Part shown: positions 642-58,370 of the stretch, one piece after another
Numbering within the stretch: the stretch's first letter is position 1
Layout of the letters: each line of letters starts with the position of its first letter
DNA from: Pristiophorus japonicus
Lineage: Eukaryota
Direction of reading: 5' to 3'
Assembly: GCF_044704955.1 (NCBI RefSeq)
Contig: NC_091984.1
Span: 177,754,001 to 177,818,000 of the forward strand
DNA: 64,000 bases
Position numbers and translations under genes: made by a program
The notes under the pieces: model-generated
Database searches by the model: none
What the model saw: only the letters and a program-made list of their open reading frames with translations
Told to the model about the DNA's origin: nothing

Positions 642-754
642 TTTGGAGTGCTTAAATAACTTGTACCATCTTCCCAACGCCACACACCTTCATTTATCAT
701 GTCAGTGAGTCCAATCCAATAAAACTGGGAATCGGCTTGATTAACAAGGAAATC
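642..754 (-). CDS. CTLD exon 2 DFLVNQADSQFYWIGLTDMINEGVWRWEDGTSYLSTP(K)
   Basis: WIGL and WxWxDG motifs; 113 nt phase 0/2; cacag acceptor, gtaagt donor; absent from the ORF track. Confidence 0.95.
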
Positions 755-6700: not shown

Positions 6701-9700
6701 ATTTAGATATTTCCTTTCAGTTTCAGACTTAAATTCGTGGTCATTTTGGAAAGTAAATTATAAGGAAGAGGAAGAACATGCTGATGTAATATTTCCATAG
6801 AAATAATGTCATGCGGGATGTATGTGTAGACTCCTTTTTTCTGTATGGGGGGTCTTGTTTTTTGTGTATGTGGAGAAGTTTCACCTTTTGCTTATGCTTT
6901 AATTATTTGGAGGTCTTGCATTTTTATGTAGGAGGTCTCATAACTTTGACTGTGGGGTGGTTACATTTCCGCATCACCTTGTACAGTACACTCACTACGT
7001 TTGATGTGTGAAACCAGCCTTTCGCTCATACGGCTGGACATCACTGACACGCTTTGTAGCAAAGCCACAGCGATGGCCTACTCACTTGCTGTTCTCTACG
7101 TGACTAATTTCTGCAGTACAATTTACACATAGAAACACATACTTTGGTTTACGAGCTAATTAGTAGAATTACAAAGATGTATTTCTCTCCAGAATTATGA
7201 GAAATAAATGATTATTTTCAAGATGTTTATATGTATCGTTTATTTAATTTGACCAGAGAAAATTACCAAATATTCAACATATTTACGTAATAAAGCAGCA
7301 AAGAATAATTATCCCATCAACGAATTTGAAGTTCACAAATATAATTCCAAGAGCATAGTGAAAACTGGATGTGAAAACAACTTCTCACCGAACAGAAAGA
7401 TAAGTAAAACGTTAAGTGAAAATGTCGATAGAATTATTTTCAGATAGTACATGTAAATCGTATTATGGAGAATATGTATCATACCTGTTCCATTCTACTG
7501 TTAATCACAACCATATTCGATAGGCTTGATTGGCAAGCTTTTCTTGCATTTGCAAAGTTTTCTTTGGATGTCGAAAAGAAATAGCATTTCCCGGCTAACA
7601 ATATCCAATGTTCCGGACACAGATTCCTAGCTATATAATGAATCATTATGCTTGTTAGTATCACTGCATGTTGTACATTACATTATGTTGATTTCATCCT
7701 TCCCAATCTTCCTCACGGCTGACTCTCTTTTATTGCTAATAATTCCTTCAGTGACATCCTCTCTCATTCTGATAACTATAGATTCAATTTCAATAAGCAT
7801 CTCTACTGCATCTCGTTGTATTATAATTTGTTTGCCTTTTCGAATCTCTCTTTAGCAACCTTTATTACCAGTTGACTGGAACTTCTCTGCGTCTATTTAA
7901 TGTGACACTTGCCAGGTAACTGACAGACAAAGAGTTGGACCATAAACAAACGTTTCATCTTCTGGGCAGAATTTTTTTACTTGCTGGTATGAATCAGCGA
8001 CGAGGTAATTATTCTGATAGGCTGTGTATTGTCGGAGCAAGGGATCAAGAAGTGAGCTTCATTGCTGAGTGTGGACAAATGGTAAAGAAATCTCATCATG
8101 ATTTCCTCTAGTCGGTATTTCTTGAAAATTCACAGATGCCTCACTTTTAAAAACAGAATTTCAGCTTACTGAGATATACAGGCTGCAGGAAATCTTCATG
8201 GTCACATTTACCAAGTTGTTTCAGGTCACAGTTTTATAGAAAGCAATCCTTCCCCGTATCTCCCTCATTGTGAACACTGCTCCCAATTTTGCTCCTGAGC
8301 CCCACACCATTCTCTGAATGTTTGAATGCGCAGAAAAATTGAATTTTAAACCTCATAGTAGCCTGTGTTGTTAAAGCTGAGTTTTGTTTAAAACTAAATT
8401 CCCAGAATTATCGCGAGGGGTTTTCCGTTCTACTGCTGTAACTTTGGCGGAAACCTTGGAGAAACAGCTAAAAACGGTGGTTTAGGCCACTTCTCCAGGA
8501 TTTCTGTCGAATTACAGTGGGGGAACAGGAGTACGCCACATAAGGTCTCCCCATCAATATTACTATAATGATAAATTCAATATCGTTCCTCAACAATTAA
8601 CATAATCTGCTGTTGAATTGAATCACCATGAGGACTAATATAAAACGAGACCCCGTTATTATCTTGTCAATAAGTCACAACTGTATTCTAAAAAACTGTA
8701 TATTCACAACTTTTTAAAGGTGCAAAAAAAAACAAATGCTATCACTTTGCTTACCATGTGTAAGCAGTTTTCCTCTTTGCACCTGTGACCACAATTCAAA
8801 GTACGGAACTAAGTAAATTTCACCTTATTGCTTCACCATTCTGCACTTTGAAGTTTGGAATCTATAATTTGATCTTGTAACAAAGGTTCTAATTTTATTT
8901 TCAAAATGGCCAAACCATTGAGAATCGGTGTAGGGACATCATGATGATTTAAATCAAAAGCATATTATCTTATGTTGTGTTTGGCAGCACTTTCACCAGG
9001 ATCACTCATGGCATCAAGTAAAGGATAATGGTAAAGAAAAAATAGCCACACGTCACTTCAATTCTATCATTTATGCTAAGAGGCCATTATTCGAGTGCAT
9101 TTGATGCTCTCTAGTATCATCTAACACCAACAAAGTTCATTTTTGGTAAGGAATTTATCAACTTCCTTGTCAAATGTTTAATATAGAAGCCCTGAAATTA
9201 CCGTGTATAATACTAACGCTTAATTGCCACTTGAATTCATTTCTTCCTGATTCCAGCAAGAGTTTGGCGGAGAAATTTAGCTCTATTGCGCCCATTTTTA
9301 GGCAGTCACATAGCCTGCCAATGCTTGAAAATGGGGTCCGAAATGCGCATGCGCACTTCTGATGGGCAGTGCAACGGATTCCGTCTTGATAAGCGGGTTT
9401 GAGCAAGCAGATCTAACGCCCGCCGGCAACAGCAGAGCAGGCAGATTATGACGTCAGTGTGCAATGCTGATTTGACACCAGCACCTCCATTTTTGAACAC
9501 CGCTCCAGCTTACACCCTGTCTTAACATAAAGCTGAACATGATGTTAAATGGCATGAAGGCCCCACCCCCACCAGCGCTACTTAAAAGATCATATACTAC
9601 TTACATGTTGGTTACTGGATTAGTTCTTCTAGCTGCTGGTGAAATTGTACCTGTTTTTTGAGTTTTCCAATAATTGCCTTAAGTTTGAATAATCTACAGG

Positions 9701-12700: not shown

Positions 12701-15700
12701 GATATGAGAAAGTAAAAAGTGCGTGCTTGCACCATCTGAAGCTTCTAAGTTAGAAGAGGTTGCGGATGAGGGAGAGGTGGGTTGAGAGAAGAAGAATTAG
12801 GTATACAGAGACCATCAACATCGATCGTTTCAACCCCGTTGGTGGCCACTGCCTCAGGGATGCTCCTTGCCATGATGGGTAGCACTGTCTCCCCCTTTGG
12901 GGTTAAAAAATGCAGGCGCACTTCTTCTCCTCCAGTTCGTTGCTGGTGCCTCCTGTTATCTACCATCTACTCCTCTAATAAAGAGGGAATCGTGACAATG
13001 AGCATCATGAAATATGTTTGGGGATGTGGCTGTCATGGTTGAATAGTTGCCAGCGTGTGCGACCTCTGAGTTGTGGGGATGAAGCTTGAAACAGTGCTAC
13101 ATGTCTGAGGGTAAGGAAACGCATAAGAATTGAAGGGTTGAGTAATAATTGACAGATTTTTCGTAGGTGGATGATGGATATGAAGTGAATTGAACACTGG
13201 ATGAGGCTTGTGTTGCAGTTGGTAGGATGTACCATTTGAAGATGAACTCACTGACCGTGACAACTCGGGCCAGAGTGTTAAACTTTTTCCTGCACTGCAT
13301 CAATGTTCTTGGAGCAACACCTCTGGCATTGATCTCCGCTGTTACTTCTTCCCACTGCCTCCTGAGCATCTGTCTGGAAGCTATCTTGTTTCATCCCGGG
13401 TAGAGGATGTCACTCCTTCTCGCCACCTGTGTAGTGCCCTAAAAGCTTGGGGCGTGATCTCTCGCATGTTCAGCTACTGCACAGAGTTTCAGAGCAGAGA
13501 TTCATTTTTGAAATGACTCCCAGCACTTGTTGTAGCCAAAATACACCTTCCTTTTAAGAGGAGCAGCTTGTCTTTAAGTAGTATGAGTCACTCTTGATAT
13601 TGTACCCCTGCTGATCTGTGCAACCAATGAAAGCATGGGTAGTGCTGGCTGCACACAGCAATCAATAGGCACGAGTTAAGTACCACGATCCCCATGCCCG
13701 TTTTCGGGTGGTTAGCCAATTTCTCCCGCAGTAATTCAAATAAATAGGTGAAATTGGACAAGGGCGGGATTCAAAACAGGTGGAATCACTTTTGGCGCTG
13801 CTAATGCAACACGCCCGATATTCAATTCTATTAAACTCAATGAAACTTAACACCCTGTAGGGTATAAAGGATGACCAATGTGATACCGGCCCCTTTGAAG
13901 CGCCACCCATGCCATTTTCAATATTGGACATGTTTTCAAATGCATTGTGGTTTTGTAATTAAAACCTTTTATTATCAATACAGCAACATAAAATATTTAA
14001 ATATCACTGTTGTCCATTGTTTTAGCTTAATAAATCCCGAATCATTTCAGCTCAAATGCCACAGCCTTAGACCTGGAAACTGAGCGACATTTGTATTGAG
14101 ATCAGGCTGAATTTAATACCCGAATAATTGGATTAACATCTCTGCTATCACAGGAGAGACGAATTTCAGACACGGTGTTAAAGTTGGCATCTGGTATCCC
14201 TTAGTACTCTTTCAGGCCCAGTTTTCTGACCAGGCAATTAAAAAAAGAAAGAAAGATTTGCATTTATGTAGCGCCTTTCCCGACCACTGGATGTCTCAAA
14301 GCACTTTACAGCCAATGCAGAATTTTTGGAGTGTAGTCACTGTTGTAATGTGGGAAACATGACAGGAATATTGCGCACAGCAAGCTCCCACAAACAGCAA
14401 GGTGATAATGACCAGATAATCTGTTTTCTTTATATTGATTAACTGCTGTTGTCTTACCGTATTTCTGCAAAGTCTGTCTGACAGTTGAAAGCGATTGTTC
14501 CAGCTTTTGAATTTTGTCAGATATCCTTGCAACTAAATGCAAAGAAACATTAATGCACAGTCACGTGTTCGATGAGGCATTCATATAATAACATGTGTAG
14601 TATTAATTGTTGATTTGAAAAGGCGTAAACTTTCACTGAGGACAATTGAACAATGAAAGCTATATTTCTATTTATGTTCTGCATATGTCCCAGCAAGCTA
14701 GTAACCAAGATTAGATTTAAAGTAAACGGTGTCATCACATTACACATGCCCATATAAATGGAAATGATCGTGAATGTAAAGTAGCTGGGGTAAAGGTGCC
14801 TCTTTTGGGATAATAATGTAACATTTCTATTAATCTTAACTAAGTCAGCATCAACATATTGAGCAAATTCCTTTCGAGTTATATCCAATATGGTCCTAAA
14901 AGCCTGCGACTATGGCGCCCTGCACACGGTATCACAGGAACAGAAAGCTTGGTATCACTGAGGCGAAATTGAGATCTGCACAAATCTCTGTGCTCAGACA
15001 GCAGTATGAAAGCAGTTTGAAACCGAGGATTCATACAGAAAAATTACTACTAAATAAGCAGCTATGTAGCCACGGTTAGGTCACTTTAAATGTTGACCAT
15101 TATGTGTCAATTTAAGTAAATACAAATTCCCATTATATTTACATGCAACTCCATTTCAACGATGTGATTTCATAGTCCCTTACATCCAACATATTTGAAG
15201 ATACAAAATTAATGAATTCCTTCCAAAATAGAGGAACAGTTTTCTCAGCTATAATGTTGCCTCGTTATTAAGTCAGCACAATTATTTTGCATCTTTATTC
15301 TTTAATTGTTGAAATAGTTATCCTTACTCAGTTAACACAGTCCATAAGCAAGTTAACGGTTGCCTTTTGTACCTAAAGCAGCTTACATGCCAATCATGTT
15401 TCTTACCATTTGGTTTTACATCTTTGAGCTCGGATAATAGCGAAGCTTTGAGAGCCTTTATGGAGTCAGCGTTCAGTTTTTGTGTGCTCACAATCTGGTA
15501 ATCTGGAAATAAAGAATATTTAACAAAAATGTTTCACCCCACTTCATTGCTTATATGCAAGCAGCAACATTGATATCCAGATGCTTGACCAGGACATTTT
15601 ACCTCTAAGCAGTGATACTTTTCTATTCTGCCTATGCTGGCTATGAGAAATTGTTGGGCGAAGTAAAGAGAATGAAACGAGGTAACTGTAAATTAGGAAA

Positions 15701-18700
15701 CAGCGGAATTCGGGTTCGTTCAATCGAGAAACATTGTAAGACATGCAACTACAATTCGCAGAAAATTTAATAAAAAATATTCTCTACTTTGTCTTACCGT
15801 GTTTCTGCAAAGTCTGTCCGAGAGTTGAAAGCGATTCTTCCAGCTTTTGAACTTTGTCAGATATCCTTGCGACTAAATACAAAGGAACATTGAGACACAG
15901 TCATGTGTTCGATGAAGAATACATATCAAGAACATGTGTAGTATTTAATTGTTCATTTGAAAAGACGTGAACTTTCGCTGAGGGCAATTGACACCTATAT
16001 TTCTATTTATTTTCTGCATAGGTCCCAGCAAGCTAGTCGCCAGAACAACATTTAAACTAAACCATGTCATTAAATTGCATATCAAGTTATAAGTGGAAAC
16101 GTTCATGAACAAAAAGTAGCTGGGGTAACTTTACTTCCTTTCAGATAATAATGTAACAATTCTATTGATCTTAAATAAGTCAGCATCAACATATTGAGCA
16201 AATGTAACGGTACATAATGCTCAAATTGATGTGAAGGAGGCGATGGACAGCAATCCAGAACAATGCATGTTAGTATTGATACAGTCTGTTCATCATAGTT
16301 GCTATTTTTCTGTGTCTCTATATTCTCTATATGGAACTTTCCTTCAGTAGGTAGTATTAACATTAATCATCATCATAGGCAGTCCTTCTGAATTGAGGAA
16401 GACTTGCTTCCATTCCTAAAGTGAGTCCTTTGGTGGCTGAATAGTCCAATGCGAGAGCCACAGACCCTGTCACAGATGGGACAGACATTCATCAGTGGAA
16501 GTGGGGAGGGGTGGGACTGATATGCCGCAGGCTCCTTCCGCTGCCTGAGACTGACCTCTTCATGCTCGCGCCATTGAGATTCAAAGAGCTCAATGCCCTC
16601 GCGGATGCACTTTCTCCACCTAGGGAGGTATTCAGCCAAGGACTCCCAGGTGTCAGTGGTGATGTCGCACTTTACCAGGGAGGCTTTGAGGGTGGCCTTG
16701 TAGCATTTCCGCTGCCCACCTTTGGCTCGTTTGCCATGAAGGAGCTCTGCATAGAGCAATTGCTTAGGGGGCATCGTGTCTGGCATGCGAACTATGTGGC
16801 CTGCCCAGTGAAGCTGATCGAGTGTGATCAGTGCTTCAATGTTGGGGATGTTAGCCTGGGCAAGGACACTGATGTTGGTGTGCCTGTCCTCCCAGGGGAT
16901 TTGCAGGATCTTGCGGAGACATCGTTGGTGATATATCCCCAGTGACTTGAGGTGTCTTCTGTACATCGTCCATGCCTCTGATCCATACAGGAGGGTGGGT
17001 ATTACTACAGCCTGTAGACCATGAGCATGGTGGTAGATTTAAGGGTCTGGTCTTCGAACACACTTTTCCTCAGGCAGGCAAAGGCTGCACTGGTGCACTG
17101 GAGGCGATGTTGAATCCCCGCATCAATGTCTGCCTTTGTTGATAAAAGGCTCCCGAGGTATGGGAAGTGGTCCACGTTGTCGAGGGCCATGCCGTGAATC
17201 TTGATGACTGGGGGGTAGTGCTGTGTGGCGACAACAGGCTAGTGGAGGATGTTAAGCGTAAGACCTATGCTTTCATATGCCTTGGTGAATACATCGACTA
17301 TATCGTGGAGTTCAGCCTCAGAATGTGTGCAGGCACAGGCGTTGTCCGCATACTGCAGCTCAACGACAGGGGTTGGGGTGATCTTGGACCTGGCCTGGAG
17401 GTGGCGTAGGTTAAACAGCTTCCCACTGGTTCTGTAGTTTAGTTCCACTGCAGTGGGGAGCTTGTTGACTGTGAGGTGGAGCATGGCAGCGAGGAAGATT
17501 GAGAAGAGGGTTGGAGCGATGACGCAGCCCTGTTTGACCAAGGTCCAGACATGGATTGGGTCTGTAATGGAACCGCTGTAAGGATCATGGCCTGCATGTC
17601 GTCGTGGAGCAGGCGAAGGATTTTGCCAAACTTTTGGGGGCATCCAAAATGGAGGAGGATGCTCCATAACCCTTCACAGTTGACAGTGTCAAAGGCCTTT
17701 GTAAGACCGAAAAAGGCCATGTATAAGAGCTGGTGCTGTTCCCTGCATTTTTCCTGCAGCTGTCGCGCTGCAAAGATGATGTCCATTGTGCTCCATAGGG
17801 AACGAAATCCACACTGTGATTCTTGAAGGAGCTCCTCGGCAACAGGGAGAAGACGGTTGAGGAGAACTCTAGCGACAACCTGCCCAGTAGTTGATAGCAG
17901 GGAGATTCCCCTGTAGTTGCCGCAGTCAGACTTGTTCCCCCTTTTACATAAGAACATAAGAACATAAGAATTAGGAACAGGAGTAGGCCATCTGGCCCCT
18001 CGAGCCTGCTCCGCCATTCAACAAGATCATGGCTGATCTGGCCGTGGACTCAGCTCCAGTTACCCGCCCGCTCCCCGTAACCCTTAATTCCCTTATTGGT
18101 TAAAAATCTATCTATCTGTGATTTGAATACATTCAATGAGCTAGCCTCAACTGCTACCTTGGGCAGAGAATTCCACAGATTCACAATCTTCTGGGAGACG
18201 AAATTCCCTCTCAACTCGGATTTAAATTGGCTCCCCCATATTTTGAGGCTGTGCCCCCTAGTTCTAGTCTCCCCGACCAGGGGAAACAACCTCTCTGCCT
18301 CTATCTTGTCTATCCCTTTCATTATCTTAAATGTTTCTACAAGGTCACCCCTCATCCTTCTGAACTCCAATGAGTAAAGACCCAGTCTACTCAATCTATC
18401 ATCAGAAGGTAACCCCCTCATCTCCGGAATCGTGGGCCTAGTGAATCGTCTCTGTACCCCCTCCAAAGCTAGTATATCCTTCCTTAAGTAAGATGACCAA
18501 AACTGCATGCAGTACTCCAGGTGCAGCCTCACCAATACCCTATACAGTTGCAGCACGACCTCCCTGCTTTTGTACTCCATCCCTCTCGCAATGAAGGCCA
18601 ACATTCCTGATTACCTGCTGCACCTACAAACTAACTTTTTGGGATTCATGCACAAGGACCCCCAGGTCCCTCTGCACCGCAGCATGTCGTAATTTCTACC

Positions 18701-42700: not shown

Positions 42701-45700
42701 GTAGATTTACTGCTGCTGGAATATTGTAGTCATTTGCATTATTTTGTTCATATGACAGGACAGCACCTGTACGTAGAGTGAAGCTATTTCCTATTGACAT
42801 ATCTGGGGGAAGTTTTGGCCCTGCACTTTAGGTAAACCTACCACGTGATGGACGTGTTGCACCCTCGCATGCTGCGATGGCTTGAAAAGATCGAGTGGTG
42901 TCAACGTTTATTGAGGTGGTAATCTTCATAGCAACATTTAGGACCATCTTCTTCTCCAACTTATTTGCAGGGCAGGTTCCAGAGGATGGCATAATTTCAT
43001 GGCAGCCAGTCACATGAAGCAGCAATGGTAAAGCCAGTTCTTCAAAAACATTGCCAGCTAAGTGTATAGGTCTGTAAACGTGGGTCCTGGGGTGATTCTT
43101 TGCTGGTACGAGATGCCTGAAGTCCATGTTTACTTGCCTGACCACGTTTCCTTGCCTTTCCTCACTCTACTTGATCTCTTCCTCCTGGAAATCTACAACA
43201 AACCTTAGAAGATGCAGTCGAATAGTCAAGCTTGGCTATGTGATTTCAGTGTCCAAGAAGGAAGAGGTGGAAAATGTATAAAAAAGAGAAAAATAAACAA
43301 GATAACGATAGATGGTTAGTTTGTCATTAGTGCTTATTAACAATGCAAAAATGTTACAATACAGCATATTTTCCATCAGCAACATTAAGATCAGTAGAAA
43401 TATATAACATTACAAAGAACAATGACTCGATTAATACATTATTCTCTGCACCGTTTGACATTCATAATCACATTCGATTGAATGAATGGCCAATTTCCGA
43501 TTATCACTTGTTCTAATATTTACCTTTCAGGCTTTGCAGTTCAGTGTTCACTTTCTTGAAAGAGGCTTGCAATTGCTTTATTTCCTTCGAAATGTGTAGG
43601 TCTTGAAAATGTTAACACAATTAATTGTACAAAAAGAAAATTCTTACAATTCAACGAGTTTGGGTTAACTAATAACTAACCATCCATTTAACAATTGAGA
43701 TAGCAATATAACGGGATAAATAGTCCACCTGACAATTGGGTGTAAAACCTGGTTTGTGGTGTCCATCAGAGAAACCATCCGATTTACATATCATTGGCCG
43801 TGATCTTGGTCTCAACTGACAAAGTGGGCAGCATGTCAGGAAGGAGTGCACGAATATGTGTACCCAAGGCTGGTTCCAAATTGGATCCTGGGCCTGTTTT
43901 CCAGAATACGTGCGAGCTGCAGGCACCAGTCAAGCATCTGGATGCAGCTCCCCAAAACTTGCCGGCTCAGGCACCTAATCCACCCACAGTTCATTCCTAG
44001 GGGGAGGGGTGTCAGGTGAATGAAAGGGGGCGAGCTGGTTAGGCCACAGTAGATTCGGAAAAAGTAATCTGTGGCGCCAGAAGCAGGCGTTAACCCGCCT
44101 GATTAGCATTAGTGACTGTTACGGTTGGGCGCCCAAACCCTTCAGGCATGGGAGATTGCACCCATAATTCGGCCCCCAACTTAAAGCTTGTGCCCCTAAA
44201 ACAGACATAAAGCTACCAATTTCCCCATCAGTGATTTCAATCGAAATATAAATCGTGTTGTTTTTATAATGACAGTTTTACACCCAGGCATAAGTTGAAA
44301 ATCTATCTATCTGTTGGTAAACTAACACAAGGCTCCAATGTTCACTTCATTAAATGCGCACAGAAAAAAATTAACTGCTGGCCACTGTCTAAAAACGAAC
44401 AGTATGCTATTTACATAAGCAGGACATTAGAAATGTAATAATTTGTGTTCTGGATTACTGAATACAGAATGATGACCAACATCTTACCATAGGTTTTAAT
44501 TTTTTGCTCTGAATTAAATTCAATCCTGTAGTCAGAACTTTGCCCAGCTGGCATCGCTATCTCAGACTCTGAAATTTAAAGAAACATAATGCTCACAACA
44601 TAGGAACGAAACGACTTATACACCAAATAATCGACTCATCGGAGGTAGTTACTGTATGAGAATTGTGTGGGGGTGGCATGAAACTCAACTTCAGCGGTGA
44701 GGAAATGCAGGCAGTAATGAATAGATCATCCGTTAGAGGCAGTGGACTCGCTATTGCCCATTTTGCGTCCCTCCGAAATTGAAATTCACCCCCATCAAGT
44801 AGAAATTGAGCTTAAACAATATGCTGAAGCTTGAGGAAGAGAATGTCGAACAAGAAAGTAATGCTTTGTCAAACTCGTGCGTGATCGCTCCTGGTAATCT
44901 GGATAATGCATTCTTTTATAGCGATGGGGCATTACGTTGCATGAGGGGCACAATGAATGATTCTGCTACTCAGGCGTTTTAATTGATACTCAACGCTCGA
45001 CGCCAATCATATATGTGCTTGACGACTTTCAGAAGCGTGTTGTTAGTTCATAGGTAATAAATTGAAGACATTACAATTTGTCCGAAATCTCAGATTTCTC
45101 TCCGCAAGTGACGGCAGTCTCCATTCCGCCACTCTTTCTCACTGATCTCCAGTCCCCCAGTCTCCCTCTCTTCCCCTGATTCCCGTTCAATGACTCGCAC
45201 CACCCCTCCCACCCATCTTCCATGCTTCTCCACCTCCATCCCCCGAAACCTCAATCTCCCTCTCTCCGATTCTCATACTCTAGCCAACATTTCTCGCCCT
45301 GTGCATCCATCCCTCGAACACCAGTCTCACTCTCTATCCCGACTCCAGATTAACAATTCTCCAAACCCCTTCCTTCCTAATTCCCAAGACCCCACATCCT
45401 CACTTCAGGAATCACGACCTTCCATCTTCTCCCCCAGCCCTGCGATTCCTAAACCCCCAAAACGACCCCGCTCACAAGCCGGTTCAAGCTCTGTGCGGCT
45501 TGTGTGTGGAGCCGGGTTGGGGAGACATCAAGCTGGAGGCTTCTTTGCGGCTGTAGCCCGTGACTCCACGGAGGGACGTTGCTGCGCCGGGAAATTTACA
45601 GGACACATAGACGAGCAGCAGTGCTTCGGCGATCAATGCCACATTCAACGAGACTGGCAGGCAATTCAGGAGGGCTGGCAGTCCTAGACTCCACAGAATG

Positions 45701-51700: not shown

Positions 51701-54700
51701 TGTCCATCAACAAACTTAAATTCAACTGAGAGTTACAAAATGTTCACATGGATTTTAATTGAACATCTGTACAATTGAGGGTTGATTTCTAATTCGTTAA
51801 TTTAGTTGGTTCACATATCTTGGAACAGTAACCAAAGTAGTCTTCTCGCCCTAATCACTGTCTGATTCTCATGATAATTCGCACTAGAGAAGTCCTTTGA
51901 AATTATCATTCCAGCAGAAACACATCAAAATCAGTTTATGTATAGTCAAGTTAAAAAAATATGTGAGTATTGAATTCTTGTTCCTAACAAAAAATAATTT
52001 TGAGAGTGAAAGATCAGCAACATATCAATTTTCGTGATTTTGAGGGGCCTCCTGTTCAACTGGCGTAAAAGGCATTGAATTGCTTGGGATTTGAAACTCA
52101 AAGAGTCACGTTCTGAAGACAACGTTGCTGCTCTTTCCGCTATAGTGGCTGTTTTCTTACCATTTGCAGATTTGTCAGTTCCAACGATATTTCCAACTGA
52201 GTTCCGTAGTTCTTTGATATCAACAGTTATCTTTATGTCTGCGAATTAAAATGTATTTTCAAAATTCATAAACAAACCCTGCTCAACGTATGAGGAATGA
52301 ATATACGTTTGCCTGCTGCGTGTACTACACGCAGGATGGACTGCACAAACTCAATAAGGCTTCTTTAAAAGCACCACTCAAACCCGCAACCTCCACAACG
52401 CAGGTGCTTGGGCACGTAATCACCTACAGATTCAATGTGCATTCGTATCCTACCATATCAGTTTGCTATCTCCATCATTAGGTCAGAAATACGCATGCTC
52501 GCTAATGATTACACAGCGTTCAGTTCAATTCTCAGATCATCAGCTAATGAAACTCTATGCACTCATGCAGCAAGAGCTGGATAACATCCAGGTTTGGGTT
52601 AATAAGTGGTAAGTAACATTCGCGCCACACAAGGCAAGTCGATCTCAATCTCTAACAAGCGAAAGTCTAACCACTGTCGCTTGACATTCAATGGCATTAC
52701 CATCGTCAAAGCCCCGCCATCAACAGCCTGGTACTCACCATTAACCAGAAACTTAACTGGTCCAGCCACATAAATATTGTGGCTACAAGAGCAGGTCCGA
52801 GGCTGGGAATTTTGCAGCGAGTGTCTCACCTCTTGTCTCCCCAAATCCTTTCAACCATCTACAAGGCTCATGTCTGGAGTGTGAGGAAACACTCTCCACT
52901 TCCCTGGTTGAGTGTAGCTCCAACAAAACTCAAGAAGTTCTAAGAAAATCCAGGGCAAAGCAGCCCACTTGCTCAGCAGCCCATCCACCACCTTAAACAT
53001 TCACTTCCTCCATCACCAGTACACCGTGGCACCATTTACAAAATTCATTGCAGCAACTTAACAACGCTAATTTGACAGCCCGTCCCAAACCTGCTATCTC
53101 TACCGCCTATCTGGACAAGTGCAGTCGGTGTATGGGAACAACATCACATCCAGGTTCCTCTCCAAGTCATACACCACCCCGGCTTCGAAATATATTGCCT
53201 TCTTCGTCATTTGGTCAGAATCCTGCAACTCCATATCTAAAAGCATTGTTGGTGCCCTTTCGCCACGTGGACTGCTGCGGTTGAAGAAGATGGCTTAACT
53301 TCTCAAGGTTATTTATGAATGGGCAAAAAATGCTAGCTTTGTCAGCGACACCCATATACCCATATACCATAAATGAAAAAGCTCAGACTGCTGCCATTGT
53401 GTCGCTGGATACCACTGTTCGAGTGGGTTTCCAGGGCAACACAGCAGCTCATCAATCTGTTCTCCAATGGATCAGTAGGATTGATGAGGCACTGCCTCGG
53501 GAGAGTGGCAATGGCTCCATGGAATACGAACGTGATGTTCTCTCTCAGAATGACATCATGCCTACTCCCTGCCCTGCCACTCCACCAATACCCTTCCTGT
53601 TACCTGTCAGACATTTGCCCAGACAGCTGCAGCCCAGGGCGAGATGGTGTAGTCTGGAGCCAGGCCTTCTAGGCTGAGAAGATCTCGCGGTCATCCTTCA
53701 AGGACATTTGCAGTCTCTTCTGGGGACGCACCTCATAGGAGCACTAGGCTAGGTAAAGCCACGCGGAAGAAAGACACTCATGGAATACGCTTGTGTGATT
53801 CGTATATTTTTGTAATGATTGAATTTATAAAATTGGTTGTGCAATTTCTGGTGATTTTAGTGTTTGTGTTGTCAGAAAGAGAATGACATGATGTTCTGTG
53901 ACAGAGGAAAGGTAAGGAGTGTGGGACTGTTGGGGAATAGGGAGGTGTGGTTAAGGTCACAGGTATCACCCAGCAGCCAGCATCTGGCTTGCCACGGTGG
54001 GCCAAATAGAGGTGGCACAGAGGACTGCTGCTGAATGAAAAATACCGTGAGGCTGCCAGGATAACGGCCATTCACATGCATAATGCACTACCTGTGTTCA
54101 GATACCAGCTGTACATTGAAGGAGTGAATTGGTTTTCCATTCATGAAAATAACCCAGTTCACATGAGCTGCATGCAAGGCACAGTGCATCCAGTCAATGG
54201 CACACTGCACCATGGGGAAGCCGACAATTTATACAAAGCCTCATTCTCGCTCTGCCTGCTTGTCTCTGGCACCAGAGAATAAGGCTAAACTGTTGTCCTG
54301 TGTATAGAGAGCCCCCGTAATGCCCCTTGCAGTGCGCTGCTAGATGTTGCATATATCTTCACCAGCAGCCTGGAAGGAACCAGCCGCATAAAAGTTAAGA
54401 GCCATGGTCACCTTGCCAGGCACAGATAATGCTGTCATTGCCCTGTTTGAGAGTGCACTTATGGCTGAGTTGCCCGGTGGCAGAGTTCAGTCACAACCTC
54501 TTTTATGACGTATCAAGCGTTGATTCCTCCTCCTTCTTCTCGCGTCTAAACTCTATTGAAAAAACAGACTCTTCGCCAACATAGATAGACTGAGTGGAAA
54601 TGTTATGGTAACTTCAGTGGGAATTTTCGTAAATTGAAAATGGCCATTCACGCAGTTTCTCTGGGGGTTCTGACGGTCTTCCGCACCCGCATGAAACATT

Positions 54701-56473
54701 CAGGTCACAGAAATTTTACTCCCGTTCATCCTAGCAGGCTGACCAGGATGTGCTACAAATGCTCTCTGCTCCTGCACGAAATATTTTAATGCGTTTGAAC
54801 CGAGGGAGCAAGCTCAGCAGTGCAAACCGTAGTGTCTAATTTCCGCGCTAGTTCCCCAACGAAAATTTGAAGGCATCACAGGAGAAGGTTAAAAATGGCC
54901 TTTTCTGCAGGGTGTCCACCGTTTTTTTGTGTGTAAATAATTCGGGAAATGGGAAGCTAGCCTGCGGATATTCCCTTTACTAAAGGAATTCCCAACTTGC
55001 TGATAAACTGTGGCCACAGGAAATTCAGTCCCACAGTGCAGAAGATGGGGGAAATTTGGACATTTGGTGATGCCGGGAAACGGGTGATATCGGTTCATCC
55101 GTTCTTTACATCTGACTTCCGATATTCATTTCCAGAGACGCTCTCCACCCAATCATATTCACGTCTTGCATTCAGATTCGAAATAGGTTTGCTAAGATTC
55201 ACCCCAGAGAAATTGTAGAGATGTTTTAAAATAAAACTTTGCGGTTTTCTGGCAGTGCAGATCAGCCCATATGTGCATTTGCGATGCTTCTACATAACAA
55301 CCAGCGGAATCCGCACCCGCCTCCATACCCCGGTGAGCAAACCATTTGGCTGTTTTTCGTTTCCCTCACAAATTACTAAAAGCTGCGGACACTGTCTGTA
55401 CACAAACGTTAAAATGAATCATACAGCAGTATGAGTAGAAATTCCTCGTCAGTGACTCATTTTTTAGTTTAATTCATGGGATGTCAACGTCATTGGTATG
55501 GTCAGGAATTATTGCCCATCCCTAATTGTCTTGCGAAGAAGTTGGTGAGCCGCCATCTTGAACCGTTGTAGACCATGAGGTGAAGGTTTGTCCTAGTGGT
55601 TTTGTGTGGCTTGCTGGGCCATTTCAGTTAGCAGTTAATGTGGGTCTGAAGTCACATGTAGACCAGACCGAGTAAGAACTGCAGGTTTCCTTCCCTAAAG
55701 GACGTTAGTGAACCAGATGGGGTTTTCCAACAATCCTGTAATTGCATGGTCACCATCACTGACACAAACTTTTTATTCCAGATTTAATTAATTAACTGAA
55801 TTTCAATTCTACAATTGCCGTGGTGTGATTTGAACTCATGTCTTCGATCACTAGTCCAAGTCTCTGGATCCCTAGTCCAGTTACATAAGCACCACGCTAC
55901 CATTTCCATCATGTAGAAATTGTTAGAGTGTTAGCGCCAAACGGGTGGTATGCTATTGATAACGGAACTGAATATTGGGTGGGGAGTATAACTGGAGATT
56001 CATACTATATCGCCGGTTTTGTGCTATCGCCACAGACCAATTTCTAAATGAGTCACAGACGAGCAATGTCTACCGGTTCAAGCGCAGGCCGACACATATC
56101 TTCTTAGGGTTCAGTAATGTAGCAGAACGTAAGTCAATTGTAGTATCAATACTTACAAGCAATAATGGCCATTGCTGTCACAACTCCTAGGCAAGTAAGA
56201 ATAATGCAGAAATTTACGTCTCTTTTCTTTGGTCGAGTCAATCGAGCCCAGTCCAACCCTAAGTGAGAACATATAGATGGAAATAAATAAAGCAAAGTTA
56301 AAAATGAAGCAATGAACAATGTAAAGCTGTTTACAAAATTAAAATCTATACATAACGTTTGAATATTGTTAATTACCTTCTTTGACCAGCACACTGTTTT
56401 CATTATCACACATGTCTAAACTCTGGATGGTGTTTGCAGGAGGTCCTTCGTCCATTGTACTTGATTGATTCAT
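642..56473 (-). CDS. Multi-exon type II transmembrane C-type lectin receptor (group II, CD209/CD23/CLEC4/CLEC17A-like) with a very long repeat-exon coiled-coil stalk; 3' end (last CTLD exon) is outside the window
   Basis: 21 AG/GT-bounded exons join in one frame (1880 nt in window): cytoplasmic exon, TM exon, 17 phase-1/1 stalk exons (one tentative), CTLD exon with CPEHW..KCYFFS, CTLD exon with YWIGLTD..EGVWRWEDG. Orthology cannot be assigned by eye. Confidence 0.9.
1341..1458. repeat. Inverted repeat with 51-bp arms, inside a GC-rich MITE-like segment (about 910-1566)
   Basis: Arms 1341-1391 and 1408-1458 match at 46/51 positions, with a 21-bp perfect core ccgaaaccgccacaaaggaaa. Confidence 0.9.
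2310..6346 (+). mobile_element. Near full-length decayed CR1 LINE
   Basis: ORF1 CTSCDMWE and SGNH-esterase remnants (VIGGSIVRGTEKCFC..), APE and RT remnants (GPDEIYPRLLRE, YINNL, KFADETK, LEYCVQFWSPHY), 3' tail ctctatgattctatga. Confidence 0.9.
7485..7630 (-). CDS. CTLD exon 1 (A)RNLCPEHWILLAGKCYFFSTSKENFANARKACQSSLSNMVVINSRMEQ
   Basis: Long-form C-type lectin N-terminal motif CPxxW...CYFFS...A...C; 146 nt phase 1/0; tatag acceptor, gtatga donor. Confidence 0.95.
8755..8808 (-). CDS. Tentative CTLD-proximal stalk exon (V)PYFELWSQVQRGKLLTH
   Basis: tttacttag acceptor, ATG|gtaagc donor, 54 nt phase 1/1; no paralog support and other AGs nearby. Confidence 0.45.
9763..10965 (+). pseudogene. Harbinger DDE transposase remnant
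   Basis: TALPVAVKVT, VQGAIDCTHIAL, LLGDKG*PL, IELTIGILKQ and CCMLHNLAI motifs with stops and frameshifts. Confidence 0.9.
11030..11605 (+). mobile_element. RTE-tailed SINE-like element nested in the Harbinger
   Basis: Homologous to about 21900-22500; ends gtcatcctcgatccgagggaccgc. Confidence 0.75.
13255..13470 (-). pseudogene. Harbinger Myb/SANT-like DNA-binding protein remnant
   Basis: QWEEVTAEINARGVAPRTLMQCRKKFNTLAR trihelix motif. Confidence 0.85.
14245..14440 (-). mobile_element. 3' part of a Deu-SINE/L2-tailed SINE (SacSINE-like)
   Basis: ggcgctacataaatgcaa L2-type tail on the minus strand; homologous to 58375-58500. Confidence 0.65.
14458..14532 (-). CDS. Type-A stalk exon (V)ARISDKIQKLEQSLSTVRQTLQKY
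   Basis: 75 nt, phase 1/1, canonical sites. Confidence 0.85.
15407..15502 (-). CDS. Type-B stalk exon (D)YQIVSTQKLNADSIKALKASLLSELKDVKPN
   Basis: 96 nt, phase 1/1, canonical sites. Confidence 0.85.
15798..15872 (-). CDS. Type-A stalk exon (V)ARISDKVQKLEESLSTLGQTLQKH
   Basis: 75 nt, phase 1/1, canonical sites. Confidence 0.85.
17946..18766 (-). mobile_element. 5'-truncated CR1 nested inside the RTE ORF
   Basis: Interrupts RTE DAVIVTI|..GNKSDCGNY; KCEVIHLG, LEYCMQFWS; (TTCTTATG)n tail. Confidence 0.92.
20720..21245. repeat. GC-rich degenerate tandem repeats in the RTE 5' leader
   Basis: About 36-bp units (..ttctatcccaggccgaaagga..), about 17-bp units (gggcccgccagctcttc) and about 31-bp units (ggccggcg.tgaac..gaaggga). 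Confidence 0.8.
21570..22502 (+). mobile_element. RTE-tailed SINE-like insertion
   Basis: Ends ggaagcaagtcatcctcgattcgagggactgcctatgatgatgat like the RTE tail; flanked by an atcaca(g/a) duplication; absent from the paralogous site at about 14930. Confidence 0.8.
22974..23069 (-). CDS. Type-B stalk exon (D)SEIASTQKLNADSLNALKASLLSELQDVKLN
   Basis: 96 nt, phase 1/1, canonical sites. Confidence 0.85.
23370..23444 (-). CDS. Type-A stalk exon (V)ARISDKIQKLEESLSTLGQTLQKH
   Basis: 75 nt, phase 1/1, canonical sites. Confidence 0.85.
24756..24851 (-). CDS. Type-B stalk exon (D)SQIVSTQKLNADSLKALKASLLSDLQHVRPN
   Basis: 96 nt, phase 1/1, canonical sites. Confidence 0.85.
25845..25907 (-). CDS. Type-C stalk exon (A)ITMQESLSDIRRTFQTLRET
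   Basis: 63 nt (21 aa, three heptads), tgtttcag acceptor, CAG|gtgaga donor. Confidence 0.85.
25960..28060 (-). mobile_element. Old CR1 remnant (minus) with a nested plus-strand LINE 3' fragment at about 26040-26440
   Basis: LEKLGLFSLEQRK..LREMFRI; tail near 25960; duplicated at 39535-40815. Confidence 0.8.
28509..29214. mobile_element. Non-autonomous Harbinger-type MITE; paralog at 34221-35567 (split by an inversion), relative at 58625-59179
   Basis: GGG..GAA(A/C)TTC / GAATTTCTC(C/A)CCC termini, shared internal sequence, AAA on both flanks. Confidence 0.7.
29375..29470 (-). CDS. Type-D stalk exon (D)SQIADNLKWTTDSVKILNASLSSQLQNMQQN
   Basis: 96 nt, phase 1/1, tttctag acceptor, gtaaga donor. 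Confidence 0.85.
30353..32628. mobile_element. Solo LTR (about 0.9 kb) interrupted by a Penelope-like element
   Basis: TGTTAGAAA...TTTCTAACA termini, 4-bp TSD ATAG (30349-52, 32629-32); paralogous modules carry the empty site ttttatagtccc. Confidence 0.8.
30557..31918 (+). mobile_element. 5'-truncated Penelope-like element with GIY-YIG remnant and inverted terminal segment
   Basis: FTCTSFNLVYCIRCS*CGLLYIGETKHRLG at about 31230-31320; 30560-30640 is an inverted copy of about 31800-31885. Confidence 0.88.
32858..32953 (-). CDS. Type-B stalk exon (D)SQIASNQELNADLLKALKASLLSELADVKLN
   Basis: 96 nt, phase 1/1, canonical sites. Confidence 0.85.
33251..33325 (-). CDS. Type-A stalk exon (V)ARISDKIQRLEESLSTLGQTLQKH
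   Basis: 75 nt, phase 1/1; donor gtacga is weaker than gtaaga in the paralogs. Confidence 0.7.
34762..35420 (-). repeat. Inverted duplicate of 33520-34176
   Basis: Reverse complement aligns colinearly over about 650 bp; it splits the MITE at 34221-35567. Confidence 0.92.
35730..35825 (-). CDS. Type-D stalk exon (D)SQLADNLKLTTDSVKILNASLSSQLQNMQQD
   Basis: 96 nt, phase 1/1, canonical sites; diverged relative of type B; internal NAS sequon. Confidence 0.85.
36904..36999 (-). CDS. Type-B stalk exon (D)SQIASTQKLNADSLKALKATLLSELQGVKTN
   Basis: 96 nt, phase 1/1, ttccag acceptor, gtaagg donor. Confidence 0.85.
37290..37343 (-). pseudogene. Type-A stalk pseudo-exon lacking its splice donor
   Basis: Compared with 15798-15872, 25 nt (ttaccgtgtttctgcaaagtctgtc on +) including the GT donor are deleted between TGTC microhomologies. 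Confidence 0.85.
38406..38501 (-). CDS. Type-B stalk exon (D)SQIASTQKLIADSVKTLKASLLSELQNVKPN
   Basis: 96 nt, phase 1/1, tttacag acceptor, gtaaga donor. Confidence 0.85.
39423..39484 (-). pseudogene. Frameshifted type-C stalk pseudo-exon (62 nt)
   Basis: Paralog of 25845-25907 with a 1-nt deletion; reads (V)KTMQESLSIIRRIFRL-stop; donor GAC|gtgaga versus CAG|gtgaga in the paralog. Confidence 0.75.
39535..40815 (-). mobile_element. Duplicated CR1/LINE remnants paralogous to 25960-27980
   Basis: Same order of fragments next to the type-C exon. Confidence 0.75.
40830..42470 (+). mobile_element. 5'-truncated CR1-clade LINE (HER1-like, shares its tail with the HE1 SINE)
   Basis: KAMAPDNI..CAPELAMPL, GVPQGSLLSPTIF, MFADDC; tail caccaccttctcaagggcaatt. 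Confidence 0.85.
42830..43200 (-). mobile_element. Harbinger transposase N-terminal remnant
   Basis: HVYRP and VLNVAMKITTSINVDTTRSFQA resemble ALPVAVKVT..LNFYA.GSFQA. Confidence 0.55.
43524..43601 (-). CDS. Unique stalk exon (D)LHISKEIKQLQASFKKVNTELQSLK
   Basis: ttttcaag acceptor, AAG|gtaaat donor, 78 nt phase 1/1, clear heptad pattern. Confidence 0.8.
44488..44568 (-). CDS. Unique stalk exon (E)SEIAMPAGQSSDYRIEFNSEQKIKTY
   Basis: tttctttaaatttcag acceptor, ATG|gtaaga donor, 81 nt phase 1/1, open frame. Confidence 0.75.
46320..46582 (+). mobile_element. HE1-type SINE, 5' truncated
   Basis: catctggttcactaatgtc..agggaag..ctccagac..ctcaagggcaattagg body and tail. Confidence 0.75.
49490..51670 (+). 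mobile_element. Internally deleted CR1 LINE (ORF1 and APE joined to the 3' tail)
   Basis: CNSHALWEL and MVGYLPAAKVNSITERVQNILRG similar to 2500-3030; jumps from the NY..SL region to the cattctatggttccatgattctat tail. Confidence 0.8.
52161..52238 (-). CDS. Unique stalk exon (Y)IKITVDIKELRNSVGNIVGTDKSAN
   Basis: ttcgcag acceptor, ATG|gtaaga donor, 78 nt phase 1/1, open frame. Confidence 0.8.
52480..53365 (+). mobile_element. HER1-like LINE 3' fragment
   Basis: Homologous to 41600-42450. Confidence 0.75.
53375..54510 (-). mobile_element. Collapsed Harbinger remnant
   Basis: MTALSVPGKVTMALNFYAAGSFQAAGEDICNI on minus; 53380-53700 is an inverted match to 11800-12090. Confidence 0.75.
55470..55905 (-). 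mobile_element. HE1-type tRNA-derived SINE
   Basis: Head with ggactag..gagttcaaatc B-box, HE1 body, tail shared with the 40830-42470 LINE. Confidence 0.8.
56157..56258 (-). CDS. Lectin transmembrane exon (G)LDWARLTRPKKRDVNFCIILTCLGVVTAMAIIA
   Basis: cacttag acceptor, gtaagt donor, 102 nt phase 1/1; basic KKR cluster before a hydrophobic stretch indicates a type II signal anchor. Confidence 0.9.
56377..56473 (-). CDS. Lectin coding exon 1, cytoplasmic tail MNQSSTMDEGPPANTIQSLDMCDNENSVLVKE
   Basis: ATG at 56473 with an in-frame TGA 14 codons upstream; 97 nt ending AAG|gtaatt in phase 1, which fits the TM exon. Confidence 0.75.
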
Positions 56474-57629: not shown

Positions 57630-58370
57630 AACCACTATTCCCATTCACCAGGCTCTCCCTCCTCTGAGTTCACTCACCTCCTATCCTCCCTTAATCTCTC
57701 CCTCCATGTAAACTCCCCAACCCACATTCACTGTCATCCCCTCGACCTTGCCATCTCTCGTGGCCACGCTACTCCCATCATATCAAACGCAGATAAGTTC
57801 ATCCCACAGAACATCCACCGAACACTCTCCACCCACATTCCCCTTAAACCACCCCTAACCCTACTTCCTTCTGTGTCTGCCACTGGAAAAAAATCTCTCC
57901 TAACTCTCTTATGAAATCTCAACTGTTCAACCATTAAACCTCCATTCACCATAAAATTTCTGCAGCAATCGATCGACTCAACCATACCCTCACCACCACC
58001 TTTGATGCCATAGTCCCTATTAAAACAATTACTCTCTCGCAACCTGGCTGTTTCCCCTAGTACAGCCCTTAGCTTTGCTGCCATAAGTCCACGGGACGCA
58101 GACTTGAACGGATATGGTGTACAACTGGTTTAGCCAATCACCACCAGATCTGGCTGCACAACATAAAGCATTTTTGGGTCCTGCTCTCGTCTGCCAAAGT
58201 TGCTCACTATTCCAGAATCATTTTGGAATCCAATGATAAACCTGGCTTCTATTCACCACTGCTAACCATCTTCTTAATCCCCTCTCCCCTATCTACTCCA
58301 CCCTCACCTCTGACAACAACTGTGAGGAGCTCATGGACTTCTTTGCCTCTAACATTGAGATCATCCGTTC
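57630..58370 (+). mobile_element. L2 LINE endonuclease-region remnant
   Basis: LLSSLNLSLHVNSPTHIHCHPLDLAISRG. Confidence 0.7.

What the first reader, a model, noticed from the sequence alone, without database searches (positions are those of the whole stretch)
642..56473. Hidden C-type lectin receptor with a giant exon-modular coiled-coil stalk
Seen: between the TM exon and the CTLD lie 16 intact stalk exons plus one tentative, totalling 1368-1422 nt (456-474 aa). Thirteen are intact copies of four module types, and all 13 keep exact length, open frame and AG/GT sites while their introns carry indels and TE insertions. Established: group II CTLs have coiled-coil necks, for example CD23 with three 63-nt repeat exons and DC-SIGN/L-SIGN with 23-aa repeats inside a single exon. 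Inference: this gene lengthened its neck by amplifying whole exon+intron cassettes. At about 0.15 nm per residue, a continuous coiled coil would hold the lectin head up to about 70 nm from the membrane. This may be an undescribed chondrichthyan long-reach pattern-recognition receptor.
Basis: partly seen in the sequence, partly recalled or inferred. Interest (0 to 1): 0.85.

Follow-up and report, generated by a model that had tools for sequence, protein, structure and literature searches.

The report
Shark lectin receptor, multi-exon stalk
A real membrane sugar-binding receptor gene of a shark-like fish, whose long rod-like stalk is encoded by 16 small exons, 13 of them recently duplicated copies; relatives are already auto-annotated in other sharks and rays, and no RNA data could be found to show how many of the exons are used.

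Summary
On the minus strand, 20 exons chain into one open reading frame: start codon at 56473, a transmembrane exon, 16 stalk exons (1368 nt, 456 aa) and two C-type lectin domain (CTLD) exons ending at 642. The last CTLD exon lies off the window. Every intron from exon 1 to the CTLD is phase 1.

Thirteen stalk exons are copies of four module types: Q1 (six copies, 96 nt), Q2 (two, 96 nt), L (four, 75 nt) and M (one, 63 nt). They sit in duplicated exon+intron cassettes that differ by 12-22% in their introns and carry retrotransposon insertions. Two further copies are damaged.

Intact copies are about half as diverged as their flanks and have no indels. A neutral-decay simulation gives P about 4e-6 for 13 of 15 staying intact.

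The modules are real coding exons in RefSeq models of other elasmobranchs. Heterodontus has one Q and one L. Pristis has a 566-aa stalk whose isoforms differ by sums of 26- and 32-aa modules. The gene belongs to an already auto-annotated family, and I found no paper describing it.

A relative's Q+L neck is predicted to form a parallel trimeric coiled coil.

Not shown: transcription, how many exons one mRNA includes, the 70-nm reach, and ligand specificity.

The parts
56377..56473 (-). Coding exon 1 (97 nt): ATG at 56473 (a second Met at 56455 is where relatives start). Encodes the cytoplasmic tail, including an ExxxL[V/F]-like motif. Ends in phase 1.
   Evidence: aligns to the N-termini of P0014 and P0084.
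56157..56258 (-). Transmembrane exon (102 nt, phase 1-1): basic stop-transfer stretch, then an 18-residue hydrophobic segment with no charged residue.
   Evidence: 68% identical to the same segment of P0014.
52161..52238 (-). Stalk exon E3 (78 nt), unique, next to the membrane.
   Evidence: matches residues 63-90 of P0084 and the same region of P0155 and P0078.
44488..44568 (-). Stalk exon E4 (81 nt), unique; contains Pro and Gly and is not coiled-coil-like.
   Evidence: 57% identical to P0084 residues 91-118.
43524..43601 (-). Stalk exon E5 (78 nt), unique; regular 4-3 hydrophobic spacing.
   Evidence: 73% identical to P0084 residues 119-144; matches the 26-aa Pristis modules.
39423..39484 (-). 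M' damaged copy of the M exon (62 nt): 1-nt deletion and in-frame TGA, but it keeps its AG and GT, so inclusion would truncate the protein.
38406..38501 (-). Q1a stalk exon (96 nt).
37284..37343 (-). L' damaged copy of the L exon: a 25-nt deletion removed the 3' end and the donor. An in-frame cryptic GT (GTAGAG) after 60 nt might rescue it; this is tentative.
36904..36999 (-). Q1b stalk exon (96 nt).
35730..35825 (-). Q2a stalk exon (96 nt); carries an N-A-S sequon.
   Evidence: 47% identical to Pristis P0078 residues 451-480.
33251..33325 (-). La stalk exon (75 nt); donor GTACGA.
32858..32953 (-). Q1c stalk exon (96 nt).
29375..29470 (-). Q2b stalk exon (96 nt).
25845..25907 (-). M stalk exon (63 nt, 21 aa, three exact heptads).
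   Evidence: 58% identical over 19 aa to Pristis P0078 residues 490-508.
24756..24851 (-). Q1d stalk exon (96 nt).
23370..23444 (-). Lb stalk exon (75 nt).
22974..23069 (-). Q1e stalk exon (96 nt); 29 of its 31 full codons match the single Q module of Pristiophorus P0014.
16376..20433 (-). Retrotransposon (LINE-like) remnant inside the Q1e-Lc intron.
   Evidence: Long ORFs; Pfam RVT_1 E=5e-16 for 17442-18017.
15798..15872 (-). Lc stalk exon (75 nt).
15407..15502 (-). Q1f stalk exon (96 nt).
14458..14532 (-). Ld stalk exon (75 nt), the last one before the CTLD, as in Heterodontus and Pristis.
7485..7630 (-). CTLD exon 1 (146 nt, phase 1 in, phase 0 out): the first conserved Cys and the C-Y-x-F-S motif.
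   Evidence: (Lectin_C profile positions 2-28).
642..754 (-). CTLD exon 2 (113 nt, phase 0 in, phase 2 out): the WIGL motif. The third CTLD exon (sugar/Ca2+ motif, WND) is beyond the left edge of the window.
   Evidence: (Lectin_C positions 29-64, E=1.3e-5).

Best explanation
This is one intact gene on the minus strand, at least 56 kb long, for a type II membrane C-type lectin of the ASGR / MGL / DC-SIGN / CLEC4F-langerin group. It belongs to an elasmobranch family that RefSeq auto-names 'CLEC10A-like', 'CLEC4M/F-like', 'CD209-like E' or 'hepatic lectin-like'.

The stalk between the membrane and the lectin head is built from small phase-1 symmetrical exons of 63-96 nt. Any of them can therefore be added, lost or skipped without breaking the frame. 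The ancestral series is E3-E4-E5 ... Q2-M-Q1-L-CTLD. Here, segmental duplications of exon+intron cassettes raised this to 16 intact stalk exons (eight Q, four L, one M and three unique), encoding up to 456 residues.

Inferred, not shown: the modules form a parallel, in-register, probably trimeric alpha-helical coiled coil with a register shift in each module. This coiled coil clusters three heads and holds them tens of nm from the membrane. The uncharged transmembrane segment and the ExxxL-type tail motif suggest an endocytic receptor. Relatives suggest Gal/GalNAc-type (QPD) binding. Most copies are kept intact by selection, so they are probably used, possibly as alternative cassette exons that set stalk length.
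For: - One ORF runs through 20 exons, with all introns up to the CTLD in phase 1.
- The two CTLD exons match contiguous positions 2-28 and 29-64 of Pfam Lectin_C.
- Colinear matches to P0014, P0084, P0078 and P0155 cover exon 1, the TM exon, E3, E4, E5, Q, M, L and the CTLD. No other TM or CTLD exon lies in between.
- The Heterodontus model reads TM-E3-Q-L-CTLD. Pristis ends in Q2-like, M-like, Q1-like, L-like, CTLD.
- Pristis isoforms differ by 26, 58 and 84 aa, which are sums of 26- and 32-aa modules.
- Cassette duplications are 77-88% identical, with one inverted pair at 93%.
- Exons are 4-13% diverged against 12-22% for their flanks. Exons have 0 indels against 5-10 events per pair in flanks.
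- Neutral-decay simulation: P(13 or more of 15 intact) of about 4e-6.
- All 16 stalk exons have a pyrimidine tract plus YAG or AAG (E5) acceptor and a GT donor; eleven of the donors read GTAAGA.
- Modules show 3-4 hydrophobic spacing and contain no Cys. Q = 21+11 residues and L = 14+11 residues.
- Three copies of Heterodontus P0155 residues 96-281 give ipSAE 0.69 against a best control of 0.00. The runs share at least 95% of contacts and pLDDT is at least 83. The in-register interface covers residues 98-153, which is exactly the Q and L modules. The tool's calibration: 21 of 30 solved one-chain pairs reached the mark against 0 of 23 single chains; its eukaryote caveats apply.
- The nearest single-CRD solved structures are DC-SIGNR, DC-SIGN, MGL/CLEC10A, SRCL, CD23, langerin and ASGR1.
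Against: - There is no transcript evidence: no RNA run was listed.
- The last CTLD exon, with the sugar-binding motif, is off the window, so I could not check that the gene is complete.
- Two copies are damaged. M' keeps both splice sites and would introduce a stop if spliced in.
- dN/dS among copies is only 0.41-0.89, from few sites.
- In the four-cassette alignment, exons have no more fully conserved columns than introns (0.70 against 0.71, counting the L' deletion).
- The closest annotated relative (P0014, 226 aa) has only one Q module.
- The trimer prediction was made on a relative, not on this protein, and may reflect memory of solved lectin trimers.
- Pro occurs in three Q1 copies and in E4; Gly occurs in E3, E4, Q1b and three L copies. 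These residues may break the helix.
Confidence: 0.78

Rival explanations
1. The gene is real, but only a subset of the repeated exons is used. The upstream block (about 40.8-34 kb, holding M', Q1a, L', Q1b and Q2a) is decaying or skipped, or the modules are alternative cassette exons. On this reading a typical protein has a much shorter stalk than 456 aa.
For: - Both damaged copies (M', L') lie in the upstream block.
- M' keeps its splice sites, so it must be skipped for a productive mRNA.
- dN/dS is 0.41-0.89.
- P0014 has one module. RefSeq lists Pristis isoforms that differ by 26, 58 and 84 aa, sums of 26- and 32-aa modules.
- Symmetrical phase-1 exons can be skipped without penalty.
Against: - Q1a, Q1b and Q2a in that same block are intact, with strong splice sites, and are less diverged than their flanks: 10%, 11% and 6% against 19-22%.
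- The simulated chance of staying intact is only 0.18-0.25 for each of them.
- Pristis models include 19 or more modules in one protein.
Confidence: 0.4
2. The locus is an unexpressed or dying gene (a pseudogene), and the intact exons only reflect how young the duplications are.
For: No RNA evidence. The last exon was not seen. Two module copies are already broken. Introns are large and full of transposons.
Against: - Twenty exons spread over 56 kb keep one frame and canonical splice sites.
- Exon divergence is about half that of the flanks, with no indels.
- Neutral decay is rejected at about 4e-6.
- The CTLD exons keep the conserved Cys, the CYxFS motif and WIGL, and are 75-87% identical to a relative.
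Confidence: 0.08
3. The cassette array is an assembly artefact: falsely duplicated haplotypes or mis-joined repeats.
For: Repeat-rich region.
Against: Copies differ by 7-23% and by many indels. They have different neighbours and different transposon insertions, and there are no N gaps. Haplotype or assembly duplicates would be nearly identical.
Confidence: 0.03

Closest known systems
Elasmobranch RefSeq models: Pristis pectinata 'CLEC4M/CLEC4F-like' X1-X5 (XP_051887780-4, 637-721 aa), Heterodontus francisci 'CD209 antigen-like protein E' X2 (281 aa), Heptranchias perlo 'CLEC10A-like' (XP_067862378, 326 aa), Pristiophorus japonicus 'hepatic lectin-like' (226 aa), and skate models of 340-451 aa
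   Same: They share the same tail, TM, E3, Q, M and L modules and CTLD in the same order. The window's CTLD exons are 75-87% identical to Pristiophorus and 50-73% to the others. The Pristis stalk is also long and repetitive.
   Different: None is the product of this locus. The number and kind of amplified modules differ by lineage: here Q1 and L are amplified, while Pristis amplifies 26- and 32-aa modules of other types. These are automatic models, and I found no published description.
Rodent/bovine Kupffer cell receptor CLEC4F (and its paralogue langerin, CD207)
   Same: Type II receptor. A long neck forms a trimeric alpha-helical coiled coil. Gal-type CRD encoded by three exons (PMC6422238).
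   Different: In CLEC4F the whole neck is one exon (PMC6422238). Here it is 16 exons. Orthology was not tested and is not implied; DC-SIGNR and MGL score slightly better.
DC-SIGN / DC-SIGNR (CD209 / CLEC4M)
   Same: Closest solved CRDs by sequence (E=1e-30). The neck is built of repeats whose number varies and sets oligomerisation and reach (PMC2971551, PMC5794141).
   Different: Their repeats are 23 aa (69 bp) inside a single exon 4, vary as a VNTR, and form tetramers (PMC5794141). Here the modules are 21-32 aa, each is its own exon with its own intron, and a trimer is predicted.
CD23 (FCER2)
   Same: Trimeric heptad-repeat stalk (PMC6791321). From my own knowledge, not checked here: three (human) or four (mouse) 21-aa repeats are each encoded by a 63-nt exon. 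This is the nearest precedent for a stalk with one repeat per exon; the M exon here is also 63 nt.
   Different: CD23 has 3-4 repeat exons against 13 here. The module sizes are mixed here (63, 75 and 96 nt), and the introns are kilobases long and carry transposons.

Membership tests
Group II C-type lectin receptors (type II membrane protein, neck, one C-terminal CTLD) | N-terminal cytoplasmic tail followed by a single signal-anchor TM segment | tested here: met
   Exons at 56473-56377 and 56258-56157 encode a tail, a basic stretch and an 18-residue hydrophobic segment. They align to the N-termini of P0014 and P0084.
Group II C-type lectin receptors (type II membrane protein, neck, one C-terminal CTLD) | C-type lectin domain (Pfam PF00059) with conserved Cys and WIGL | tested here: met
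   Exon 2 alone passes the Pfam cut-off (26.3 bits against 22.6, E=1.3e-5, profile positions 29-64). Exon 1 matches positions 2-28 (15 bits). Only positions 2-64 of 107 lie inside the window.
Group II C-type lectin receptors (type II membrane protein, neck, one C-terminal CTLD) | Ca2+/sugar-binding motifs (EPN or QPD, and WND) | not testable with these tools
   The third CTLD exon lies beyond the left edge of the window, and no such motif occurs on the minus strand. Relatives carry QPD+WND; Pristiophorus has QPN.
Group II C-type lectin receptors (type II membrane protein, neck, one C-terminal CTLD) | CRD split over three exons, with the neck joined in phase 1 | tested here: inconclusive
   Two CRD exons of 146 and 113 nt with phases 1/0 and 0/2 fit the usual three-exon layout (PMC6422238, PMC5794141). 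The third exon was not seen.
Group II C-type lectin receptors (type II membrane protein, neck, one C-terminal CTLD) | Neck that oligomerises as an alpha-helical coiled coil | tested here: inconclusive
   The modules show 3-4 hydrophobic spacing. The Heterodontus relative's Q+L+CTLD in three copies gives ipSAE 0.69 against a best control of 0.00. This is a prediction on a relative, not a measurement on this protein.
Elasmobranch 'CLEC10A-like / CLEC4M-like / hepatic lectin-like' family (RefSeq automatic names) | Colinear tail, TM, E3, Q and/or M and L modules, then CTLD | tested here: met
   tblastn of P0014, P0084, P0078 and P0151-P0157 hits exactly these exons in order.
CLEC4F (Kupffer cell receptor) orthologue | Neck encoded by one large exon; gene in tandem with CD207 | tested here: not met
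   The neck here is 16 exons, against one exon in CLEC4F (PMC6422238). Synteny was not testable. The RefSeq 'CLEC4F-like' names are automatic.
DC-SIGN / DC-SIGNR | Tandem 23-aa repeats within a single neck exon | tested here: not met
   The modules are 21, 25, 26, 27 and 32 aa, and each is a separate exon, against a 69-bp repeat in exon 4 (PMC5794141).

The most novel reading that the evidence does not exclude
Elasmobranchs carry a family of Gal-type lectin receptors whose stalk length evolves quickly and independently in each lineage, by gain and loss of phase-1 cassette exons (about 30 aa in one Pristiophorus model, 456 aa here, 566-592 aa in sawfish). Selection keeps the extra exons intact. 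This would give the longest coiled-coil stalks known for a C-type lectin receptor (60-80 nm if fully helical) and, through exon skipping, a receptor of adjustable length.
Probability: 0.3. Interest if true: 0.6.

Novelty: new variant of a known kind. Interest (0 to 1): 0.42.

Why it matters
Neck length and oligomer state set how C-type lectin receptors present their heads. In DC-SIGNR, repeat number affects tetramer stability and has been linked to disease (PMC5794141). This locus shows a different genetic route to a long neck: whole exon+intron cassettes are duplicated and then kept intact. That route also makes length adjustable by splicing.

It adds a cartilaginous-fish example to the history of the ASGR / DC-SIGN / CLEC4F group, and gives a clear test case for exon-cassette amplification under selection.

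The novelty is limited. Variable repeat necks, long trimeric necks (CLEC4F) and stalks with one repeat per exon (CD23) are all known. Related long-necked proteins are already present as automatic models in RefSeq.

Tried and rejected
- **RNA evidence.** The look-up of sequencing runs (kind rna, window 29300-38600) listed no run. Read laying could therefore not be used, and the single search is spent. This says nothing about expression.
- **Genomic loci of relatives.** I could not read the exon structure of relatives directly and inferred it from isoform length differences.
- **Protein searches.** The search for homologous proteins with P0078, whole and with region 540-695, found only one further relative, from Rhinoraja. 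No protein encoded by this very locus turned up.
- **Earlier scan notes.** None for this place, and none for 'lectin' in this genome.
- **Other conserved cassette segments.** I considered the 'F' and 'V' segments as exons and rejected them. F is phase 2-2. V is 85 nt in one copy and is stopped, lacks a donor or is frame-shifted in the others. No phase-1 open exon is shared by the copies there.
- **The 54-nt tentative exon.** No candidate has support from any relative.
- **Weak hits set aside.** Pfam Trimer_CC for an L exon (E=0.07) is too weak to use. NCBIfam hits are irrelevant. Rfam found nothing.
- **Joined model.** Exons were searched one by one by reference. Frame continuity was checked only inside a script.

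Full report
**Where the gene is**

The feature lies on the minus strand. A motif scan of all six frames found the CTLD start (C-x-x-W ... C-Y-F-F) at 7619-7575 and WIGL at 718-704, both on the minus strand. With splice sites read from the sequence, CTLD exon 1 is 7630-7485 (146 nt) and CTLD exon 2 is 754-642 (113 nt).

Their translations match contiguous positions 2-28 and 29-64 of Pfam Lectin_C. Exon 2 alone passes the curated cut-off. The third CTLD exon, which carries the sugar/Ca2+ motif, is beyond the left edge of the window.

At the other end, an ATG at 56473 opens a 97-nt exon. It is followed by a 102-nt exon at 56258-56157 that encodes a basic stretch and an uncharged 18-residue hydrophobic segment.

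**The stalk exons**

Self-comparison shows a nest of direct duplications between about 14.3 and 40.8 kb, 77-88% identical, plus one inverted pair at 92-93%. Clustering of minus-strand ORFs and alignment of the copies revealed two repeated exon families with conserved AG and GT borders:
- a 96-nt family with eight copies, six of type Q1 and two of a more divergent type Q2;
- a 75-nt family, L, with four copies.

A search of the 1.84-billion-protein library with CTLD exon 1 returned elasmobranch relatives:
- P0014, Pristiophorus japonicus, 226 aa;
- P0084, Heptranchias perlo, 326 aa;
- P0078, Pristis pectinata, 695 aa, with isoforms of 637-721 aa.

A further search added relatives from Heterodontus, Leucoraja and Amblyraja, and the searches with P0078 added one from Rhinoraja; sequences are.

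tblastn of these proteins against the window located three unique stalk exons: E3 at 52238-52161, E4 at 44568-44488 and E5 at 43601-43524. It also located a 63-nt exon, M, at 25907-25845.

All 20 exons chain into one ORF of 608 codons inside the window. Every intron from exon 1 to the CTLD is phase 1. Every stalk exon is a multiple of 3 nt long and ends on a G that starts the next codon.

Two more module copies are damaged. M' (39484-39423) has a 1-nt deletion and an in-frame TGA, yet keeps both splice sites. L' (from 37343) lost 25 nt including its donor, although an in-frame cryptic GT after 60 nt might rescue it.

Two other conserved cassette segments, which I call F and V, look like relic exons but cannot be read in phase 1.

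**Are the exons real coding exons?**

Yes, at the level of the family.
- The Heterodontus RefSeq model reads TM-E3-Q-L-CTLD.
- The Pristiophorus model has one Q module that matches 29 of the 31 full codons of copy Q1e.
- The Pristis and skate models end in Q2-like, M-like, Q1-like, L-like, CTLD. This is the order of exons Q2b-M-Q1d-Lb in the window.
- The Pristis isoforms differ by 26, 58 and 84 residues, which are sums of 26- and 32-aa modules.

**Are the extra copies kept by selection?**

- In pairwise comparisons of nearest paralogues, exons are 4-13% diverged against 12-22% for 300-nt flanks. Pooled over seven pairs, this is 58/630 against 711/3970.
- Exons have no indels, against 5-10 events per pair in flanks.
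- I simulated neutral decay on terminal branches at the flank rates. Each copy then has a 16-45% chance of keeping its length, frame, AG and GT, and P(13 or more of 15 intact) is about 4e-6.

Evidence pointing the other way:
- dN/dS among copies is only 0.41-0.89, from few sites.
- In the four best-aligned cassettes, exons have no more fully conserved columns than introns.

My reading is that selection acts mainly on frame, length and splice sites, as expected for a low-complexity coiled coil.

The copies differ too much to be an assembly artefact.

**How it probably works (inferred)**

- The modules have regular 3-4 hydrophobic spacing, are rich in Leu, Ser, Gln and Lys, and contain no Cys.
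- Q is 32 residues (21+11) and L is 25 (14+11), which means one register shift per module. M is three exact heptads. E3, E4 and E5 are 26, 27 and 26 residues.
- Pro occurs in three Q1 copies and in E4. Gly occurs in E3, E4, Q1b and three L copies. The rod is therefore more likely segmented than perfectly continuous, as shown for DC-SIGNR (PMC2971551).
- 456 residues at about 0.15 nm each gives about 68 nm. This is an upper limit that assumes all exons are used and all residues are helical.
- Three copies of the Heterodontus relative's Q+L+CTLD (residues 96-281) were predicted to form a parallel in-register bundle. The contacts run through residues 98-153, exactly the two modules. ipSAE was 0.69 against a best control of 0.00; the runs share at least 95% of contacts and pLDDT is at least 83. 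In the tool's calibration, 21 of 30 solved one-chain pairs reached the mark against 0 of 23 single chains. The pass may be from memory of solved lectin trimers.
- The tail has a conserved ExxxL-hydrophobic motif and the TM segment has no charged residue. This suggests an endocytic receptor rather than one that signals through an adaptor; this is inference only.
- Relatives carry QPD and WND (Gal/GalNAc type). This gene's own motif is off the window.

**Comparison with known systems**

The CRD is closest by sequence to the solved CRDs of DC-SIGNR, DC-SIGN, MGL/CLEC10A, SRCL, CD23, langerin and ASGR1. It is a group II receptor with no clear mammalian orthologue.
- CLEC4F has a long trimeric neck, but it is encoded by one exon (PMC6422238).
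- DC-SIGNR varies a 69-bp repeat inside exon 4 (PMC5794141).
- CD23 has a trimeric heptad stalk (PMC6791321). From my own knowledge, it has three or four 63-nt repeat exons, which is the nearest precedent.

What is new here is the scale (13 repeat exons), the mix of module sizes, and growth by kilobase-sized exon+intron cassettes. I found no paper describing this family in cartilaginous fish. Automatic RefSeq models of relatives exist, including a longer stalk in sawfish.

**Limits**

- No RNA run was listed, so inclusion of the exons in mRNA is untested.
- Exons were searched one at a time by reference.
- The species of the window was not identified. All best hits are elasmobranchs.

Noticed in passing
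window 16310-16190, 23881-23770, 33759-33650 and 37776-37660 (minus strand): The best-conserved 120 nt of the four V-L-Q1 cassettes (89-97% identity, above the Q and L exons) looks like a 3' splice region (TACTAAC in one copy, pyrimidine tract, AG) followed by a coiled-coil-like ORF. It cannot be a phase-1 exon in any copy: it is 85 nt in one, stopped or without a donor in two, and has a 2-nt deletion in the fourth. It may be a relic exon or an intronic control element.
   Followed up: partly
window 33514-34177 and 34760-35422: A 664-nt inverted repeat (92-93% complementary, 582-nt loop) lies wholly inside the intron between exons Q2a and La. It would form a long double-stranded stem in the pre-mRNA.
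   Followed up: partly
window 14700-14909 (minus strand): Just upstream of the last L exon, the F-type and V-type relic segments are fused at a short shared ATTTG. This looks like the junction of an unequal crossover or deletion that removed one cassette.
   Followed up: partly
window 39423-39484 (minus strand): The damaged M' exon keeps a strong acceptor and a GTGAGA donor but contains an in-frame TGA. If spliced in, it would act as a poison exon.
   Followed up: partly
window 20723-20881 and 21150-21244: GC-rich minisatellites (38-nt unit x4, 32-nt unit x3) lie beside the retrotransposon remnant in the Q1e-Lc intron.
   Followed up: no
window 58296-58900: Upstream of the gene, about 600 nt resemble intronic segments at 14324-14440, 28374-28981 and 34086-34690 (76-85% identical). 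This is probably a dispersed short repeat element.
   Followed up: no
window 5240-5620 (+ strand) and 1-440, 40830-42430: More retrotransposon remnants: RVT_1 E=1.6e-4 at 5240-5620, inside the intron between the two CTLD exons. Related copies lie at the window start and at 40.9-42.4 kb.
   Followed up: partly
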